A stretch of 64,000 nucleotides of DNA from Macrostomum lignano (GCA_002269645.1 NIVC01001638.1:1-64000), one strand, 5' to 3'; counted from the first letter of the stretch, positions 23,185 through 33,156 are shown. The notes: generated from the sequence alone by a model not told the origin. A program made the numbers and translations.

Positions 23185-26100
23185 ATGTCCTCAGAATCTG
23201 CACCCATCCCGGAGGTGCCAGATCACGCTATGGACACTGGCAGTCTAAAGGACATTGTGTCCGAAACTAATAAAATGCTAGAATCGATTCTCGAGCTAAG
23301 CAATTCCGCTTTTTTGCCGAGCGACGCCGTTTTGAGTGACACCTGGCGCGAATTGAAGCATAGGTGCGAATTAATTCAGCCACTGGTCTCGGACTGTGAG
23401 GTCGGACCGCCTCAGCTGCTGGTTGTGGGCCAGAGCAATTCAGGCAAGAGTAGCCTCATCAATGAGATGCTGGGTAAGTGTTCTCTGTGTAACATTGCAG
23501 AGGCTTTGATGACGTAACACTATTTAACTTTGTTCAGCTGCAATTTATGCTACAAGCTTGATGCAACAGCCGCTGCAATATATGCTACAAGCTTGATGCA
23601 ACAACAGCTGCAATATATGATACAAGCTTGATGCAAAACAGCTGCAATATATGCTACAAGCTTGATGCAACAACAACTGCAATATATGCTACAAGCTTGA
23701 TGCAACAACAACTGCAATATATGCTACAAGCTTGATGCAACAGTCGCTGCAATATATGCTACAAGCTTGATGCAACAGTCGCTGCAATATATGCTACAAG
23801 CTTGATGCAAAACAGCTGCAATATATGCTACAAGCTTGATGCAACAACAGCTGCAATTTATGCTACAAGCTTGATGCAAAACAGCTGCAATATATGCTAC
23901 AAGCTTGATGCAACAACAGCTGCAATTTATGCTACAAGCTTGATGCAAAACAGCTGCAATTTATGCTACAAGCTTGATGCAACACAGCTGCAATATATGC
24001 TACAAGCTTGATGCAAAACAGCTGCAATTTATGCTACAAGCTTGATGCAACAACAGCTGCAATATATGCTACAAGCTTGATGCAAAACAGCTGCAATATA
24101 TGCTACAAGCTTGATGCAACAACAGCTGCAATTTATGCTACAAGCTTGATGCGAACACAACTGCAATATATGCTACAAGCTTGATGCAACAGCCGCTGCA
24201 ATATATGCTACAAGCTTGATGCAACAACAACTGCAATATATGCTACAAGCTTGATGCAACAGTCGCTGCAATATATGCTACAAGCTTGATGCAAAACAGC
24301 TGCAATATATGCTACAAGCTTGATGCAACACAGCTGCAATATATACTACAAGCTTGATGCAACAACAGCTGCAATATATGCTACAAGCTTGATGCAACAA
24401 CAGCTGCAATATATGCTACAAGCTTGATGCAACAACAGCTGCAATTTATGCTACAAGCTTGATGCAAAACAGCTGCAATATATGCTACAAGCTTGATGCA
24501 ACACAGCTGCAATATATGCTACAAGCTTGATGCAACAGTCGCTGCAATATATGCTACAAGCTTGATGCAACAACAGCTGCAATATATGCTACAAGCTTGA
24601 TGCGAACACAACTGCAATATATGCTACAAGCTTGATGCAACAGCCGCTGCAATATATGCTACAAGCTTGATGCAACAACAACTGCAATATATGCTACAAG
24701 CTTGATGCAACAGTCGCTGCAATATATGCTACAAGCTTGATGCAACAGTCGCTGCAATATATGCTACAAGCTTGATGCAAAACAGCTGCAATATATGCTA
24801 CAAGCTTGATGCAACACAGCTGCAATATATGCTACAAGCTTGATGCAACAACAGCTGCAATATATGCTAAAAGCTTGATGCAACACAGCTGCAATATATG
24901 CTACAAGCTTGATGCAAAACAGCTGCAATATATGCTACAAGCTTGATGCAACAGTCGCTGCAATATATGCTACAAGCTTGATGCAAAACAGCTGCAATAT
25001 ATGCTACAAGCTTGATGCAACAACAGCTGCAATTTATGCTACAAGCTTGATGCAAAACAGCTGCAATTTATGCTACAAGCTTGATGCAACACAGCTGCAA
25101 TATATGCTACAAGCTTGATGCAAAACAGCTGCAATTTATGCTACAAGCTTGATGCAACAACAGCTGCAATATATGCTACAAGCTTGATGCAAAACAGCTG
25201 CAATATATGCTACAAGCTTGATGCAACAACAGCTGCAATTTATGCTACAAGCTTGATGCGAACACAACTGCAATATATGCTACAAGCTTGATGCAACAGC
25301 CGCTGCAATATATGCTACAAGCTTGATGCAACAACAACTGCAATATATGCTACAAGCTTGATGCAACAGTCGCTGCAATATATGCTACAAGCTTGATGCA
25401 ACAGTCGCTGCAATATATGCTACAAGCTTGATGCAAAACAGCTGCAATATATGCTACAAGCTTGATGCAACACAGCTGCAATATATGCTACAAGCTTGAT
25501 GCAACAACAGCTGCAATATATGCTACAAGCTTGATGCAACAACAGCTGCAATATATGCTACAAGCTTGATGCAACAACAGCTGCAATTTATGCTACAAGC
25601 TTGATGCAAAACAGCTGCAATATATGCTACAAGCTTGATGCAACACAGCTGCAATATATGCTACAAGCTTGATGCAACAGTCGCTGCAATATATGCTACA
25701 AGCTTGATGCAACAACAACTGCAATATATGCTAGAAGCTTGATGCAACACAGCTGCAATATATGCTACAAGCTTGATGCAACAACAGCTGCAATATATGC
25801 TACAAGCTTGATGCAACACAGCTGCAATATATGCTACAAGCTTGATGCAACAACAGCTGCAATATATGCTACAAGCTTGATGCAACACAGCTGCAATATA
25901 TGCTACAAGCTTGATGCAACAACAGCTGCAATATATGCTACAAGCTTGATGCAACAACAGCTGCAATATATGCTACAAGCTTGATGCAACAACAGCTGCA
26001 ATATATGCTACAAGCTTGATGCAACACAGCTGCAATATATGCTACAAGCTTGATGCAACACAGCTGCAATATATGCTACAAGCTTGATGCAACACAGCTG

Positions 26101-32100: not shown

Positions 32101-33156
32101 CTCATCTCCATTTCTCATGTCTAGCATCCCATCTCCATTTCTCATGTCTAGCATCCCATCTCCATTTCTCATGTCTAGCATCCCATTTCCATTTCTCATG
32201 TCTAGCATCTCATCTCCATTTCTCATGTCTAGCATCCGATCTCCATTTCTCATGTCTAACATCCCATCTCCATTTCTCATGTCTAGCATCTCATCTCCAT
32301 TTCTCATGTCTAGCATCCCATCTCCATTTCTCATGTCTAGCATCCCATTTCCATTTCTCATGTCTAGCATCTCATCTCCATTTCTCATGTCTAGCATCCC
32401 ATCTCCAATTCTCATTAGTAATAACAAAACATTTTCTAACGCTAACCCGCGAAGGTTTCGCCCGAAAATCGTTCTGTCCGACTGTCGGATGTCGGTCAGG
32501 GTCGCTACACCCCATTGCTGCTCCTGCGTCGTGAGGCAACCCTGCCATCGAGTGGCTGTCCTCCCGAGCTTCTGCCACAGCCAGCAGTTGCTGCTGCTGT
32601 TGGACAGATTCGATCTGTCAATTTTGCCAGCGCGGACACCTTCAGTTTGGGCGCCGTTTTGAAAGCTTTGATGTGAGTTGCTACTGTCAGTCTGTCAGTC
32701 AGTCAGTCAGTCAGTCAGTCAGTCAGTCAGTCAGTCAGTCAGTCAGTCAGTCAGTCAGTCAGTCAGTCAGTCAGTCAGTCAGTCAGTCAGTCAGTCAGTC
32801 AGTCAGTCAGTCAGTCAGTCAGTCAGTCAGTCAGTCAGTCAGTCAGTCAGTCAGTCAGTCAGTCAGTCAGTCAGTCAGTCAGTCAGTCAATCAGTCAGTC
32901 AGTCAGTCAGTCAGTCAGTTAGTCAGTTTTCCCAATTATCTTCAGCTTCGGTAGCAAATCTCCGCCAAAATTCGAAGAGATTAACGACGAGATTAGCACT
33001 CTGATTGAGGACTGCATTCAGTCGAACCCTGCCCAACGGCCCACGCCAGCGGATGTGGCGGAGAGGCTGAGACAACTTCTCAAGGAGCCGACGAAAGCTA
33101 AAGTAACTTTGAAGGTCGAAACTGGAAAGGACTCTCAATCAGCATTCTACGCTTAA
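23185..33156 (+). CDS. DSTYK: DSTYK/RIPK5-like protein: dynamin-like P-loop domain, helical linker and C-terminal pseudokinase. Exons 23185-23473, 26200-26522, 27212-27513, 28816-28998, ~29166-29695, 30227-30623, 31745-31997, 32455-32672, 32946-33156
   Basis: Exon phases are consistent with GT-AG sites (the exon-5 acceptor is uncertain). G1 LLVVGQSNSGKSSLINEMLG, G3 VDCTG, G4 FFVLNKMD. Kinase fold: LVLKK, DRLKIGLNIAESLAQMHLDGQPHLNLHMGNIF, VRLSDVG, PPEL, ADTFSLGAVL, LIEDCIQSNPAQRP. The GTPase-like plus kinase architecture matches DSTYK; orthology is inferred, not tested. Confidence 0.8.
23535..26118. repeat. 34/35-bp minisatellite filling DSTYK-like intron 1 (GCTACAAGCTTGATGCAACAACAGCTGCAATATAT)n
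   Basis: About 75 units; the variant GCGAACACAACTGC recurs at ~24151, ~24602 and ~25258. Confidence 0.98.
26608..27047. repeat. 25-bp minisatellite in intron 2 (AAGGTCACTGATCTCTTAGATCCTT)n
   Basis: About 17 units. Confidence 0.95.
27533..28781. repeat. 1.25-kb (GATA)n microsatellite filling intron 3
   Basis: Starts about 20 nt after the donor and ends about 35 nt before the acceptor. Confidence 0.99.
29750..30180. repeat. 32-bp minisatellite in intron 5 (CCCTTATCTCAGTGAAGCCAAAGACAAACCCG)n
   Basis: Period 32 (29781, 29813, ...). Confidence 0.95.
30770..31670. repeat. 14-bp minisatellite in intron 6 (CTGCCATTCTACCC)n grading into (TTTCCATTCTACCC)n
   Basis: Direct inspection; the unit drifts along the array. 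Confidence 0.95.
32058..32414. repeat. 27-bp minisatellite in intron 7 (TCATGTCTAGCATCCCATCTCCATTTC)n
   Basis: About 13 units. Confidence 0.96.
32686..32925. repeat. (CAGT)n microsatellite filling intron 8
   Basis: Direct inspection. Confidence 0.98.

What the first reader, a model, noticed from the sequence alone, without database searches (positions are those of the whole stretch)
23185..33156. DSTYK-like gene with an apparently intact GTPase P-loop but a catalytically dead kinase
Seen: G1 GQSNSGKS fits GxxxxGKS, G3 is DCTG and G4 is NKMD, though no obvious G2 Thr. In the kinase, HRD becomes HLN (catalytic Asp lost), the catalytic loop reads HLNLHMGN, the Gly-loop is degenerate (IGSQGSPVY) and DFG becomes DVG, while the beta-3 Lys (LVLKK) and PPE remain. 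Known: vertebrate DSTYK is an active kinase whose N-terminal P-loop is, from memory, degenerate. Inference: the enzymatic roles are inverted here, giving a dynamin-like GTPase with a pseudokinase scaffold. Substitutions rather than indels, and nine intact exons, argue against error or pseudogenisation.
Basis: partly seen in the sequence, partly recalled or inferred. Interest (0 to 1): 0.7.

Follow-up and report, generated by a model that had tools for sequence, protein, structure and literature searches.

The report
Flatworm DSTYK paralogue with two degraded active sites
This is a real, selectively maintained extra copy of the DSTYK gene in the flatworm Macrostomum lignano, whose kinase has lost its catalytic residues and whose mitofusin-like GTPase keeps its nucleotide-binding motifs but lacks the threonine needed for hydrolysis, so it is most likely a non-catalytic regulator.

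Summary
Nine GT-AG exons (23185-33156, + strand) splice into a 901-aa ORF, or 886 aa with a downstream exon-5 acceptor. The window is Macrostomum lignano DNA, and the product is 97-98% identical to GenBank hypothetical protein BOX15_Mlig032330g2.

The gene is a DSTYK-family member. It aligns end to end with the canonical M. lignano DSTYK (E=7e-37), and its G domain groups with DSTYKs (85% bootstrap).

- **Kinase.** It is a HER3-type pseudokinase: HRD is HLN and the alphaC Glu is Ala, while the beta3 Lys, catalytic-loop Asn and DxG Asp are kept.
- **GTPase family.** The N-terminus belongs to the BDLP/mitofusin branch of dynamins (profile E=5e-24).
- **P-loop.** An intact P-loop is the ancestral invertebrate state, not an inversion. 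M. lignano also has a canonical paralogue in which both domains look active.
- **Switch I.** This gene alone lacks the switch-I Thr that all 26 other compared sequences have. The change equals the engineered, catalytically dead Mfn1-T109A.

Comparison with a collinear second copy gives dN/dS of 0.29 (P=3e-4), so it is not a pseudogene. The most likely role is a nucleotide-binding, non-catalytic scaffold. Interest is moderate.

The parts
23185..23473 (+). Exon 1 (aa 1-96): start codon, N-terminal helices, G1 P-loop GQSNSGKS at 23428-23451
   Evidence: identical motif in L001/P0001/P0002
26200..26522 (+). Exon 2 (aa 97-204): switch-I region SQSQGPNRVAHQISKICYS at 26214-26270 (A111 at 26241-26243, where the family has Thr); G3 DCTG at 26409-26420
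27212..27513 (+). Exon 3 (aa 205-304): G4 NKMD at 27275-27286; variable loop aa 261-295
28816..28998 (+). Exon 4 (aa 305-365): start of the long helical stalk
29166..29695 (+). Exon 5 (aa 366-542): helical stalk. The alternative acceptor at 29211 (used in GenBank model P0001) removes 15 aa
30227..30623 (+). Exon 6 (aa 543-674): end of stalk and kinase N-lobe. Gly-loop IGSQGSPVY at 30487-30513; beta3 Lys K655 at 30562-30564; alphaC position A670 at 30607-30609 (family Glu)
31745..31997 (+). Exon 7 (aa 675-759): catalytic loop HLNLHMGN at 31968-31991 (N752 replaces the catalytic Asp; N757 kept)
32455..32672 (+). Exon 8 (aa 760-831): SDVG (D771 at 32488-32490), long activation segment, PPE at 32560-32568, DTFSLG at 32635-32652
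   Evidence: 6 synonymous and 0 non-synonymous differences from L001
32946..33156 (+). Exon 9 (aa 832-901): kinase C-lobe end (AQRP at 33031-33042), tail, TAA stop

Best explanation
The locus encodes a Macrostomum-lineage paralogue of DSTYK. The protein has three parts: a BDLP/mitofusin-type dynamin-superfamily G domain (about aa 75-290), a long helical stalk (about aa 294-602) and a protein-kinase fold (about aa 615-880).

Both catalytic centres are degraded while their nucleotide-binding residues are kept.
- **G domain.** It keeps G1 (GQSNSGKS), G3 (DCTG) and G4 (NKMD). It has Ala, and no Ser or Thr anywhere in the loop, where every relative has the switch-I Thr. It should therefore bind GTP but hydrolyse it poorly or not at all, like Mfn1-T109A.
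- **Kinase.** It keeps the beta3 Lys, the catalytic-loop Asn and the DxG Asp. It has lost the catalytic Asp (HRD to HLN), the HRD Arg and the alphaC Glu, which is the same pattern as HER3. It may therefore still bind ATP but should not transfer phosphate.

The gene is maintained by purifying selection. Its inferred role is that of a non-catalytic, nucleotide-sensing scaffold or allosteric partner. A plausible partner is the canonical M. lignano DSTYK, in which both domains look active.

Shown here: gene structure, family membership, motif states, selection. Inferred: GTP and ATP binding without turnover, and the scaffold or partner role.
For: **Gene model and independent copy.**

**DSTYK membership.**
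- All full-length hits carry the name DSTYK.
- A single BLASTP HSP covers 76-862 against 85-874 of the canonical M. lignano DSTYK, E=7e-37.
- The G-domain NJ tree places it in the DSTYK clade at 85% against 17 bacterial dynamin-like proteins.

**BDLP/mitofusin affinity.**
- The DSTYK N-terminal profile hits BDLP 2j68 at E=5.4e-24 and MFN1 at 2.7e-18.
- Foldseek's top hits for the AF2 model are mini-MFN1, E about 1e-10.

**Switch-I Thr.**
- It is present in all 26 other sequences compared and absent only here.
- The six residues between the conserved anchors are N-R-V-A-H-Q, so the result does not depend on where the gap is placed.
- Mfn1-T109A is described as 'catalytic dead, monomeric ... bound to GTP'.

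**Kinase motif table.**. The HER3 pattern (alphaC His, HRN, VCIK, DFG, ATP site accessible) comes from PMC13259870 Table 2.

**Selection.**
- Against the collinear copy there are 18 synonymous and 18 non-synonymous changes, dN/dS=0.29, binomial P=3.3e-4.
- The G core has 3 synonymous and 0 non-synonymous changes; the pseudokinase has 8 and 4.

**Age of the dead state.** A second M. lignano paralogue, the C-terminal half of P0003, has the same HxN and SD[LV]GQ pattern and the same kept Lys, Asn and Asp. It is only 31-35% identical and groups with the window gene at 100% in the kinase tree. The dead-kinase state is therefore old and stably kept.
Against: - No biochemistry exists; nucleotide binding and lack of turnover are inferred from motifs and from analogy with Mfn1-T109A and HER3.
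- HER3 itself retains weak activity, so 'dead' may mean 'very weak'.
- The AF2 model is only moderately confident (mean pLDDT 56.6, pTM 0.40).
- Kinase-domain placement relative to outgroups is unresolved because of a long branch.
- dN/dS rests on 36 differences between two very close copies, which may be alleles or homeologues.
- Expression was not checked here.
- The proposed partnership with the canonical DSTYK is speculation.
Confidence: 0.55

Rival explanations
1. One reading: a catalytically working dynamin-like GTPase carrying a pseudokinase as a passive scaffold, so that the enzymatic roles are inverted relative to vertebrate DSTYK.
For: - G1, G3 and G4 are intact and the G core shows 3 synonymous and 0 non-synonymous changes.
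- The kinase lacks the catalytic Asp.
- The recalled human DSTYK has all four G motifs degenerate (unverified).
- Other DSTYK paralogues do fit this picture, with a dead kinase and all of G1-G4 intact: P0003 C-terminal half, Ptychodera P0031, Nematostella P0008.
Against: - The switch-I Thr is invariant in the 26 other dynamin-like sequences compared and missing here.
- The equivalent engineered Mfn1 mutant is catalytically dead.
- Intact G motifs are ancestral in invertebrate DSTYKs that also have active-looking kinases, so nothing was 'inverted' in this lineage.
Confidence: 0.2
2. An atypical but still active kinase: phosphotransfer persists at a low level or through compensating residues, as reported for some proteins classed as pseudokinases.
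For: The beta3 Lys, catalytic-loop Asn and DxG Asp are retained in both old paralogues. The pseudokinase domain is under constraint, with 8 synonymous and 4 non-synonymous changes.
Against: The catalytic Asp, the HRD Arg, the alphaC Glu and the first Gly of the Gly-loop are all lost together, and one residue is inserted in the Gly-loop. No alternative exon restores them.
Confidence: 0.12
3. A decaying duplicate (young pseudogene) whose ORF merely happens to be still open.
For: - Catalytic residues are lost in both domains.
- The G-domain branch is long.
- There is a cluster of 9 non-synonymous changes in aa 261-295.
Against: - Two independently assembled copies keep all nine exons, all splice sites and the full ORF.
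- dN/dS is 0.29 with P=3.3e-4 against neutrality.
- The same dead-kinase motif pattern is shared with a paralogue only about 31-35% identical, so it has been kept for a long time.
Confidence: 0.05
4. An assembly or gene-model artefact: the odd motifs come from mis-joined exons or sequencing errors.
For: Introns are packed with tandem repeats that are hard to assemble. Two database models (P0002, P0155) differ by skipping half of exon 7.
Against: - The exon sequences and the motifs are the same in the window, in L001/P0001 and, where covered, in P0002/P0155.
- The differences are substitutions, not indels.
- All junctions are canonical.
- The exon-7 skip removes the catalytic loop and does not restore it.
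Confidence: 0.03

Closest known systems
Canonical DSTYK of Macrostomum lignano (UniRef A0A1I8HXC8, P0004) and invertebrate DSTYK orthologues (Saccoglossus, Ptychodera, Lingula, Branchiostoma)
   Same: Same length class (about 875-930 aa) and same order of parts: N-terminal helices, BDLP-like G domain, helical stalk, C-terminal kinase fold. The alignment is end to end. G1, G3 and G4 are shared.
   Different: The canonical members have the switch-I PCT[AS]R Thr, the alphaC Glu, HRDIKxxN and D[FLM]G. The window gene has PNRVAH, Ala, HLNLHMGN and DVG. Identity to them is only about 20-23%.
Second M. lignano DSTYK-like paralogue (C-terminal half of fused model A0A1I8G7D2, P0003)
   Same: It is the closest relative outside the near-identical copies (E=8.6e-42). 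It shares the dead catalytic loop (HGNLHAAN against HLNLHMGN), SD[LV]GQ, GSQGS and loss of the alphaC Glu. The two form a 100% clade in the kinase tree.
   Different: That paralogue still has the switch-I Thr (PCTSQ) and DTPG. The window gene has additionally lost the Thr.
Vertebrate DSTYK (RIPK5/Dusty)
   Same: Same family. It is reported as an active kinase acting at late endosomes, lysosomes and vacuoles (PMC11933320, PMC6981171, PMC7012607).
   Different: The kinase is active. No paper found in the searchable library describes a G domain in DSTYK.
Mitofusin-1 / bacterial dynamin-like protein BDLP
   Same: The G domain is followed by a helical bundle. The family-wide switch-I motif 'PCTA' is like BDLP. 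Sequence-profile and fold matches support this.
   Different: There is no transmembrane or paddle segment, and a kinase fold sits at the C-terminus. The window gene carries the natural equivalent of the catalytically dead T109A.
HER3 (ErbB3) pseudokinase
   Same: The same set of changes: catalytic Asp to Asn, alphaC Glu lost, with the beta3 Lys, catalytic-loop Asn and DxG Asp kept.
   Different: It is an unrelated kinase group and a receptor architecture. HER3 keeps the HRD Arg and a canonical GxGxxG. This is an analogy of mechanism only.
ROCO proteins (LRRK1/2)
   Same: A GTPase and a kinase in one polypeptide.
   Different: The G domain here is dynamin/BDLP-type, not Roc. The Pfam Roc hit is only 15.9 bits against a cut-off of 27 and covers the P-loop alone. 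There is no COR domain.

Membership tests
DSTYK (Dusty) family | End-to-end collinear homology with DSTYK orthologues | tested here: met
   A single BLASTP HSP covers 76-862 against 85-874 of canonical M. lignano DSTYK, E=7e-37. All full-length phmmer hits are named DSTYK.
DSTYK (Dusty) family | Architecture: N-terminal dynamin-like G domain, helical region, C-terminal kinase fold | tested here: met
   Pfam Dynamin_N, MMR_HSR1 and PK_Tyr_Ser-Thr. AF2 secondary structure. Foldseek hits to MFN1 and kinases.
DSTYK (Dusty) family | Groups inside the DSTYK clade in a tree with outgroups | tested here: inconclusive
   G domain: yes, 85% bootstrap against 17 bacterial DLPs. Kinase domain: canonical DSTYKs form a 91% clade, but the window+P0003b clade (100%) is unplaced relative to outgroups. 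Both trees are NJ only.
DSTYK (Dusty) family | Catalytically competent kinase motifs (alphaC Glu, HRDIKxxN, D[FLM]G) | tested here: not met
   AAALHY, HLNLHMGN and SDVG. It is therefore a divergent, non-catalytic paralogue, not an orthologue.
Dynamin superfamily, BDLP/mitofusin branch | G1 GxxxxGK[ST] | tested here: met
   GQSNSGKS, aa 82-89
Dynamin superfamily, BDLP/mitofusin branch | G2 switch-I Thr (Mfn1 T109) | tested here: not met
   PNRVAHQ has no Ser or Thr between the conserved anchors. Thr is present in all 26 other sequences.
Dynamin superfamily, BDLP/mitofusin branch | G3 DxxG and G4 [NT]KxD | tested here: met
   DCTG and NKMD. D167, G170 and D229 are invariant in the family alignment; K227 is nearly invariant (at least 90%).
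Dynamin superfamily, BDLP/mitofusin branch | Helical bundle following the G domain | tested here: met
   Helices 294-602 in the AF2 model. The Foldseek alignment to mini-MFN1 spans about 346 columns, TMt 0.55. The profile hit to BDLP spans columns 14-339. Model confidence is moderate.
Dynamin superfamily, BDLP/mitofusin branch | GTP hydrolysis and membrane remodelling | not testable with these tools
   Needs biochemistry.
Pseudokinase (sequence definition: kinase fold lacking at least one of VAIK Lys, HRD Asp, DFG Asp) | Protein-kinase fold | tested here: met
   PK_Tyr_Ser-Thr 26.5 bits against a cut-off of 23.1. Foldseek TMt about 0.65 to GCN2, TNNI3K, BRAF and Src.
Pseudokinase (sequence definition: kinase fold lacking at least one of VAIK Lys, HRD Asp, DFG Asp) | Loss of a canonical catalytic residue | tested here: met
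   The HRD Asp is Asn752. The definition follows the abstract of PMC13519141 and PMC13259870.
Pseudokinase (sequence definition: kinase fold lacking at least one of VAIK Lys, HRD Asp, DFG Asp) | Absence of phosphotransfer activity | not testable with these tools
   Needs a kinase assay.
ROCO (Roc-COR-kinase) | Roc G domain plus COR domain | tested here: not met
   Roc scores 15.9 bits against a cut-off of 27, over the P-loop only. There is no COR hit.

The most novel reading that the evidence does not exclude
DSTYK would be, ancestrally, a mitofusin/BDLP-type membrane GTPase fused to a kinase, and the two enzymatic modules would have decayed reciprocally in different lineages.
- Vertebrates keep the kinase and have a pseudo-GTPase.
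- Several invertebrate paralogues (Macrostomum, Ptychodera, Nematostella) keep the G motifs and have dead kinases.
- The gene in this window has gone one step further. It would be a 'double pseudoenzyme' that still binds GTP and ATP and acts as a nucleotide-sensing regulator of the canonical enzyme.

The open literature searched does not mention a G domain in DSTYK at all.
Probability: 0.35. Interest if true: 0.6.

Novelty: new variant of a known kind. Interest (0 to 1): 0.4.

Why it matters
DSTYK is a human disease gene (urinary-tract malformations, spastic paraplegia SPG23, scoliosis models). It acts on late endosomes, lysosomes and vacuoles, yet the papers I could search describe only its kinase domain.

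The comparison forced by this flatworm gene shows that the N-terminal two-thirds of the family is a mitofusin/BDLP-like dynamin module with fully intact GTP-binding motifs in invertebrates. That gives a concrete and testable reason for the membrane phenotypes.

The window gene itself offers a natural experiment. It is a selected paralogue in which the hydrolytic Thr and the catalytic Asp are both gone while the nucleotide-binding residues remain. It is useful for separating the binding functions from the catalytic functions of each module.

As a single gene in one flatworm, it remains an ordinary case of a lineage-specific pseudoenzyme paralogue.

Tried and rejected
- **Protein database searches.** All three searches were swamped by generic kinases or bacterial GTPases, because only the 8000 candidates sharing most words are scored. 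They returned only the near-identical M. lignano copies of the family. No vertebrate or other flatworm DSTYK could be fetched that way.
- **Spliced product.** The near-identical database protein P0001 was used instead.
- **PDB sequence search with the single protein.** It gave only marginal hits, E of 0.02 or worse. The family profile was needed.
- **Peng et al. 2006** (the Dusty kinases paper) is not held.
- **Genomic context of the canonical paralogue.** P0004 is not on record in the contig index. The idea that the canonical and pseudokinase copies sit in tandem therefore rests only on the fused model P0003.
- **Alternative exon restoring HRD.** None exists in six frames of 20000-37000.
- **Second copy in the window.** None.
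- **ROCO/LRRK-type reading.** Rejected: the Roc hit is below threshold and there is no COR domain.
- **Pseudogene reading.** Rejected on the intact ORF and splice sites in two copies and dN/dS of 0.29.
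Full report
**1. What is in the sequence**

The window is eukaryotic DNA rich in mini- and microsatellites. On the + strand between 23185 and 33156 there are nine open stretches. They join through canonical AG/GT boundaries into one ORF of 2706 nt, or 901 aa.

The exons are 23185-23473, 26200-26522, 27212-27513, 28816-28998, 29166-29695, 30227-30623, 31745-31997, 32455-32672 and 32946-33156. 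A second in-frame acceptor at 29211 removes 15 residues and gives 886 aa.

The product is 97-98% identical to GenBank 'hypothetical protein BOX15_Mlig032330g2' of Macrostomum lignano (P0001, 886 aa). P0001 uses the 29211 acceptor. The product is also close to two partial UniProt models, so the window is M. lignano DNA.

No second copy lies in the window. No alternative exon with an HRD-type catalytic loop exists in any frame of 20000-37000.

**2. A real, selected gene**

P0001 is encoded on contig NIVC01000293.1 of assembly GCA_002269645.1 (L001). That locus is collinear with the window well beyond the gene, at about 95-97% nucleotide identity. It has an MFS transporter upstream and a HORMA gene downstream. 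It is therefore an allele or homeologue.

All nine exons map without gaps, every splice site is kept and the ORF is open.

- There are 18 synonymous and 18 non-synonymous differences over 616 synonymous and 2087 non-synonymous sites.
- This gives dS=0.030, dN=0.0087 and dN/dS=0.29.
- Under neutrality about 8 of the 36 changes would be synonymous. The binomial P of seeing 18 or more is 3.3e-4.

| Region | Synonymous | Non-synonymous |
|---|---|---|
| G-domain core | 3 | 0 |
| Pseudokinase | 8 | 4 |
| Exon 8 (DVG to PPE) | 6 | 0 |
| Loop aa 261-295 | 3 | 9 |

The counts are small, but they point clearly away from a decaying pseudogene.

**3. Family**

An exhaustive phmmer search with P0001 against 1.84 billion representatives gave 63 hits. 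[quoted passage not shown] They come from Saccoglossus, Ptychodera, Lingula, Branchiostoma, Nematostella and M. lignano itself.

Against the canonical M. lignano DSTYK (P0004, A0A1I8HXC8) BLASTP gives one HSP from residue 76 to 862, with 23% identity and E=7e-37.

An NJ tree of the G domain with 17 bacterial dynamin-like proteins as outgroups puts the window gene inside the DSTYK clade at 85% bootstrap.

On the kinase domain:
- The canonical DSTYKs form a 91% clade.
- The window gene forms a 100% clade with the C-terminal half of P0003.
- That long-branched pair is not placed reliably relative to the outgroups.

P0003 (A0A1I8G7D2, 1557 aa) looks like a fused gene model. It joins a partial canonical DSTYK to a second DSTYK-like gene. 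It is the closest relative of the window gene (E=8.6e-42), at only 31-35% identity.

**4. The N-terminal domain is mitofusin/BDLP-like**

Pfam gives Dynamin_N, GTP_EFTU and MMR_HSR1 above their cut-offs.

A profile of ten DSTYK-family N-terminal regions (A3) hits the following in the PDB sequence set:
- Nostoc BDLP (2j68) at E=5.4e-24, over profile positions 14-339
- Mitofusin-1 at 2.7e-18
- FZO1, MFN2, the Campylobacter DLP pair and IniA

An AF2 model of P0001, built with a 13-sequence alignment, is only moderately confident. Mean pLDDT is 56.6 and pTM is 0.40. The G core and the kinase C-lobe reach 65-89. Its best Foldseek matches are mini-mitofusin-1 structures (E about 1e-10, about 346 aligned columns, TMt 0.55). 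Protein kinases follow: GCN2, TNNI3K, BRAF and Src, with TMt about 0.65.

**5. State of the GTPase motifs**

In the family alignment G1 is GQ[TS]N[SC]GKSS, switch I is P-C-T-[AS]-R (as in BDLP 'NPCTAV'), G3 is D[ST]PG and G4 is [TNS]KxD.

The canonical invertebrate proteins, including the flatworm's own P0004, have all four motifs. The window gene keeps G1 (GQSNSGKS), G3 (DCTG) and G4 (NKMD). Where the others have P-CT-AR it reads P-NRVAH-Q.

Between the conserved anchors (SQSQ.P and the hydrophobic strand ending in YS) the six residues are N, R, V, A, H, Q. None is Ser or Thr, so the loss does not depend on where the two-residue insertion is placed. MAFFT and BLASTP both put Ala111 on the Thr column.

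That Thr is present in all 26 other sequences compared: 9 DSTYK-family proteins and 17 bacterial dynamin-like proteins. In the profile-PDB alignment it falls on the Thr of Mfn1 'GHITN', which is T109. A recent preprint summarises mini-Mfn1-T109A as 'catalytic dead, monomeric ... bound to GTP' (10.1101/2025.10.08.681278).

The same PNRVAH is found in the window, P0001 and P0002, so it is not a sequencing error.

The G domain is thus better described as a probable GTP binder with impaired hydrolysis than as an 'intact GTPase'.

**6. State of the kinase motifs**

These come from a kinase-domain alignment with seven outgroup kinases and from A2.

| Element | Family or canonical | Window gene |
|---|---|---|
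| Gly-loop | GxGxxG | A-I-G-S-Q-G plus one inserted residue |
| beta3 | AVK | LVLK (Lys kept) |
| Catalytic loop | HRDIKxxN | HLNLHMGN (Arg and Asp lost, Asn kept) |
| DFG | DFG, DLG or DMG | DVG (Asp and Gly kept; within family range) |
| APE | APE | PPE |
| Subdomain IX Asp, subdomain XI Arg | present | kept |

By the usual sequence definition this is a pseudokinase (PMC13519141 abstract; PMC13259870).

The pattern matches HER3 as tabulated in PMC13259870: VCIK, alphaC His, HRNxxxxN, DFG, with the ATP site accessible. I therefore infer that ATP binding may persist without meaningful phosphotransfer.

The second M. lignano paralogue (P0003 C-terminal half) has LAVK, 'APGLHV', HGNLHAAN and SDLG. 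It shows the same losses and the same retentions at about 31% identity, so this state is old and has been maintained.

**7. The wider pattern**

Two further DSTYK-named proteins have dead kinases with G1-G4 all intact:
- Ptychodera P0031: FNN for HRD, NTC for DFG, AIR for AVK.
- Nematostella P0008: HLIDPRLTN, LDIS.

P0003's C-terminal half also keeps the switch-I Thr.

For vertebrates I could not fetch a sequence. At G1-G4 it shows GQDCNVKC, CKL, VAPC and KVPKL, all degenerate.

Vertebrate DSTYK is reported as an active kinase at late endosomes (PMC11933320). Searches of the open literature for DSTYK together with dynamin, GTPase or 'GTPase domain' found no paper describing a G domain in DSTYK.

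**8.

Correct:
- DSTYK-like gene
- Dynamin-like N-terminus
- Dead kinase
- Not a pseudogene
- An active paralogue exists

Incorrect or overstated:
- 'Inverted roles' is not right. Intact G motifs are the ancestral invertebrate state, alongside active-looking kinases.
- 'Intact GTPase' is overstated. The hydrolytic Thr is gone, uniquely in this gene.

**9. Mechanism proposed**

This is inference. The protein binds GTP through G1, G3 and G4 but cannot hydrolyse it efficiently. It may therefore not undergo the hydrolysis-coupled G-G dimer cycle of mitofusin/BDLP.

Its pseudokinase may bind ATP and serve as a docking or allosteric surface. As a paralogue of a two-enzyme protein, it most plausibly modulates the canonical DSTYK or shares its partners.

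I put about 0.55 on this overall. My confidence in the component claims is:

| Claim | Confidence |
|---|---|
| Real, selected DSTYK paralogue | about 0.9 |
| No phosphotransfer | about 0.8 |
| Hydrolysis-impaired GTP binder | about 0.55 |

**10. Novelty and score**

The sequence is already in GenBank as a hypothetical protein. Lineage-specific pseudokinase paralogues are common. The combination found here is a new variant of a known kind: a G2-less but otherwise intact BDLP-type G domain, a HER3-type pseudokinase, and clear constraint.

The more interesting by-product is at the family level. The DSTYK N-terminus is a mitofusin/BDLP-type module with reciprocal decay of the two enzymes across lineages.

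Interest is 0.4.

Noticed in passing
window 23535-26119, 26605-27048, 27530-28782, 29774-30181, 30760-31667, 32059-32415, 32686-32927: Seven of the gene's eight introns are largely filled by tandem arrays: a 35-bp unit x75, a 25-bp unit x18, (ATAG)x313, a 32-bp unit x9.5, a 14-bp unit x66, a 27-bp unit x13 and (GTCA)x60. Intron 1 is 2726 bp here but only 200 bp in the other copy (L001 10290-10489), so the 35-bp minisatellite is a large length polymorphism or an assembly collapse.
   Followed up: partly
window 9794-10300, 11091-12595, 13098-15144, 16980-17748: More large tandem arrays lie upstream: (ATCT)x127, a 14-bp unit x107, a 29-bp unit x72 (which produces a spurious 690-aa ORF on the minus strand at 13152-15224) and a 24-bp unit x33.
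   Followed up: no
window 1135-2028 (+) and 5957-7848 (-): ORFs in opposite orientations match Pfam ASC (amiloride-sensitive sodium channel / DEG-ENaC), with E from 2e-16 to 4e-29. They look like two channel genes or gene fragments in inverted orientation.
   Followed up: no
window 17897-19291 (+); about 34700-44000 (+); 63397-63915 (+): The neighbouring genes are an MFS_1 transporter (E=2.5e-19), a HORMA-domain gene downstream (by synteny with L001) and a PP2C phosphatase exon (E=3e-33). The same MFS - DSTYK-like - HORMA order is found in L001.
   Followed up: partly
window about 31829-31997 (second part of exon 7); proteins P0002 and P0155: Two UniProt gene models of near-identical copies skip the 56 residues after 'LWKLL', which include the HLNLHMGN catalytic loop. 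The I704V variant (ATT to GTT) seen in the other copy creates a GT at that point. This may be a prediction artefact or a real in-frame alternative donor.
   Followed up: partly
protein P0003 (UniRef A0A1I8G7D2, elsewhere in the M. lignano genome): This 1557-aa model appears to fuse a partial canonical DSTYK (active-looking HRDVKLAN) with a second DSTYK-like gene carrying HGNLHAAN. That suggests the canonical and pseudokinase copies lie in tandem, so the pseudokinase lineage would have arisen by tandem duplication. The genomic context could not be retrieved.
   Followed up: partly
proteins P0031 (Ptychodera flava XP_070553794.1) and P0008 (Nematostella vectensis XP_032222785.1): These proteins, annotated as DSTYK or DSTYK-like, have fully degenerate kinase catalytic motifs but intact G1-G4. 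Kinase death with G-domain retention has therefore happened independently in at least three phyla. Saccoglossus P0006 has Arg at the aligned beta3 Lys position (AVRVVK).
   Followed up: partly
window aa 261-295 of the product (exon 3, about nt 27380-27484): Nine of the 18 non-synonymous differences between the two copies cluster in this 35-residue, low-confidence loop after the G domain. The cause is either relaxed constraint or diversifying change.
   Followed up: no
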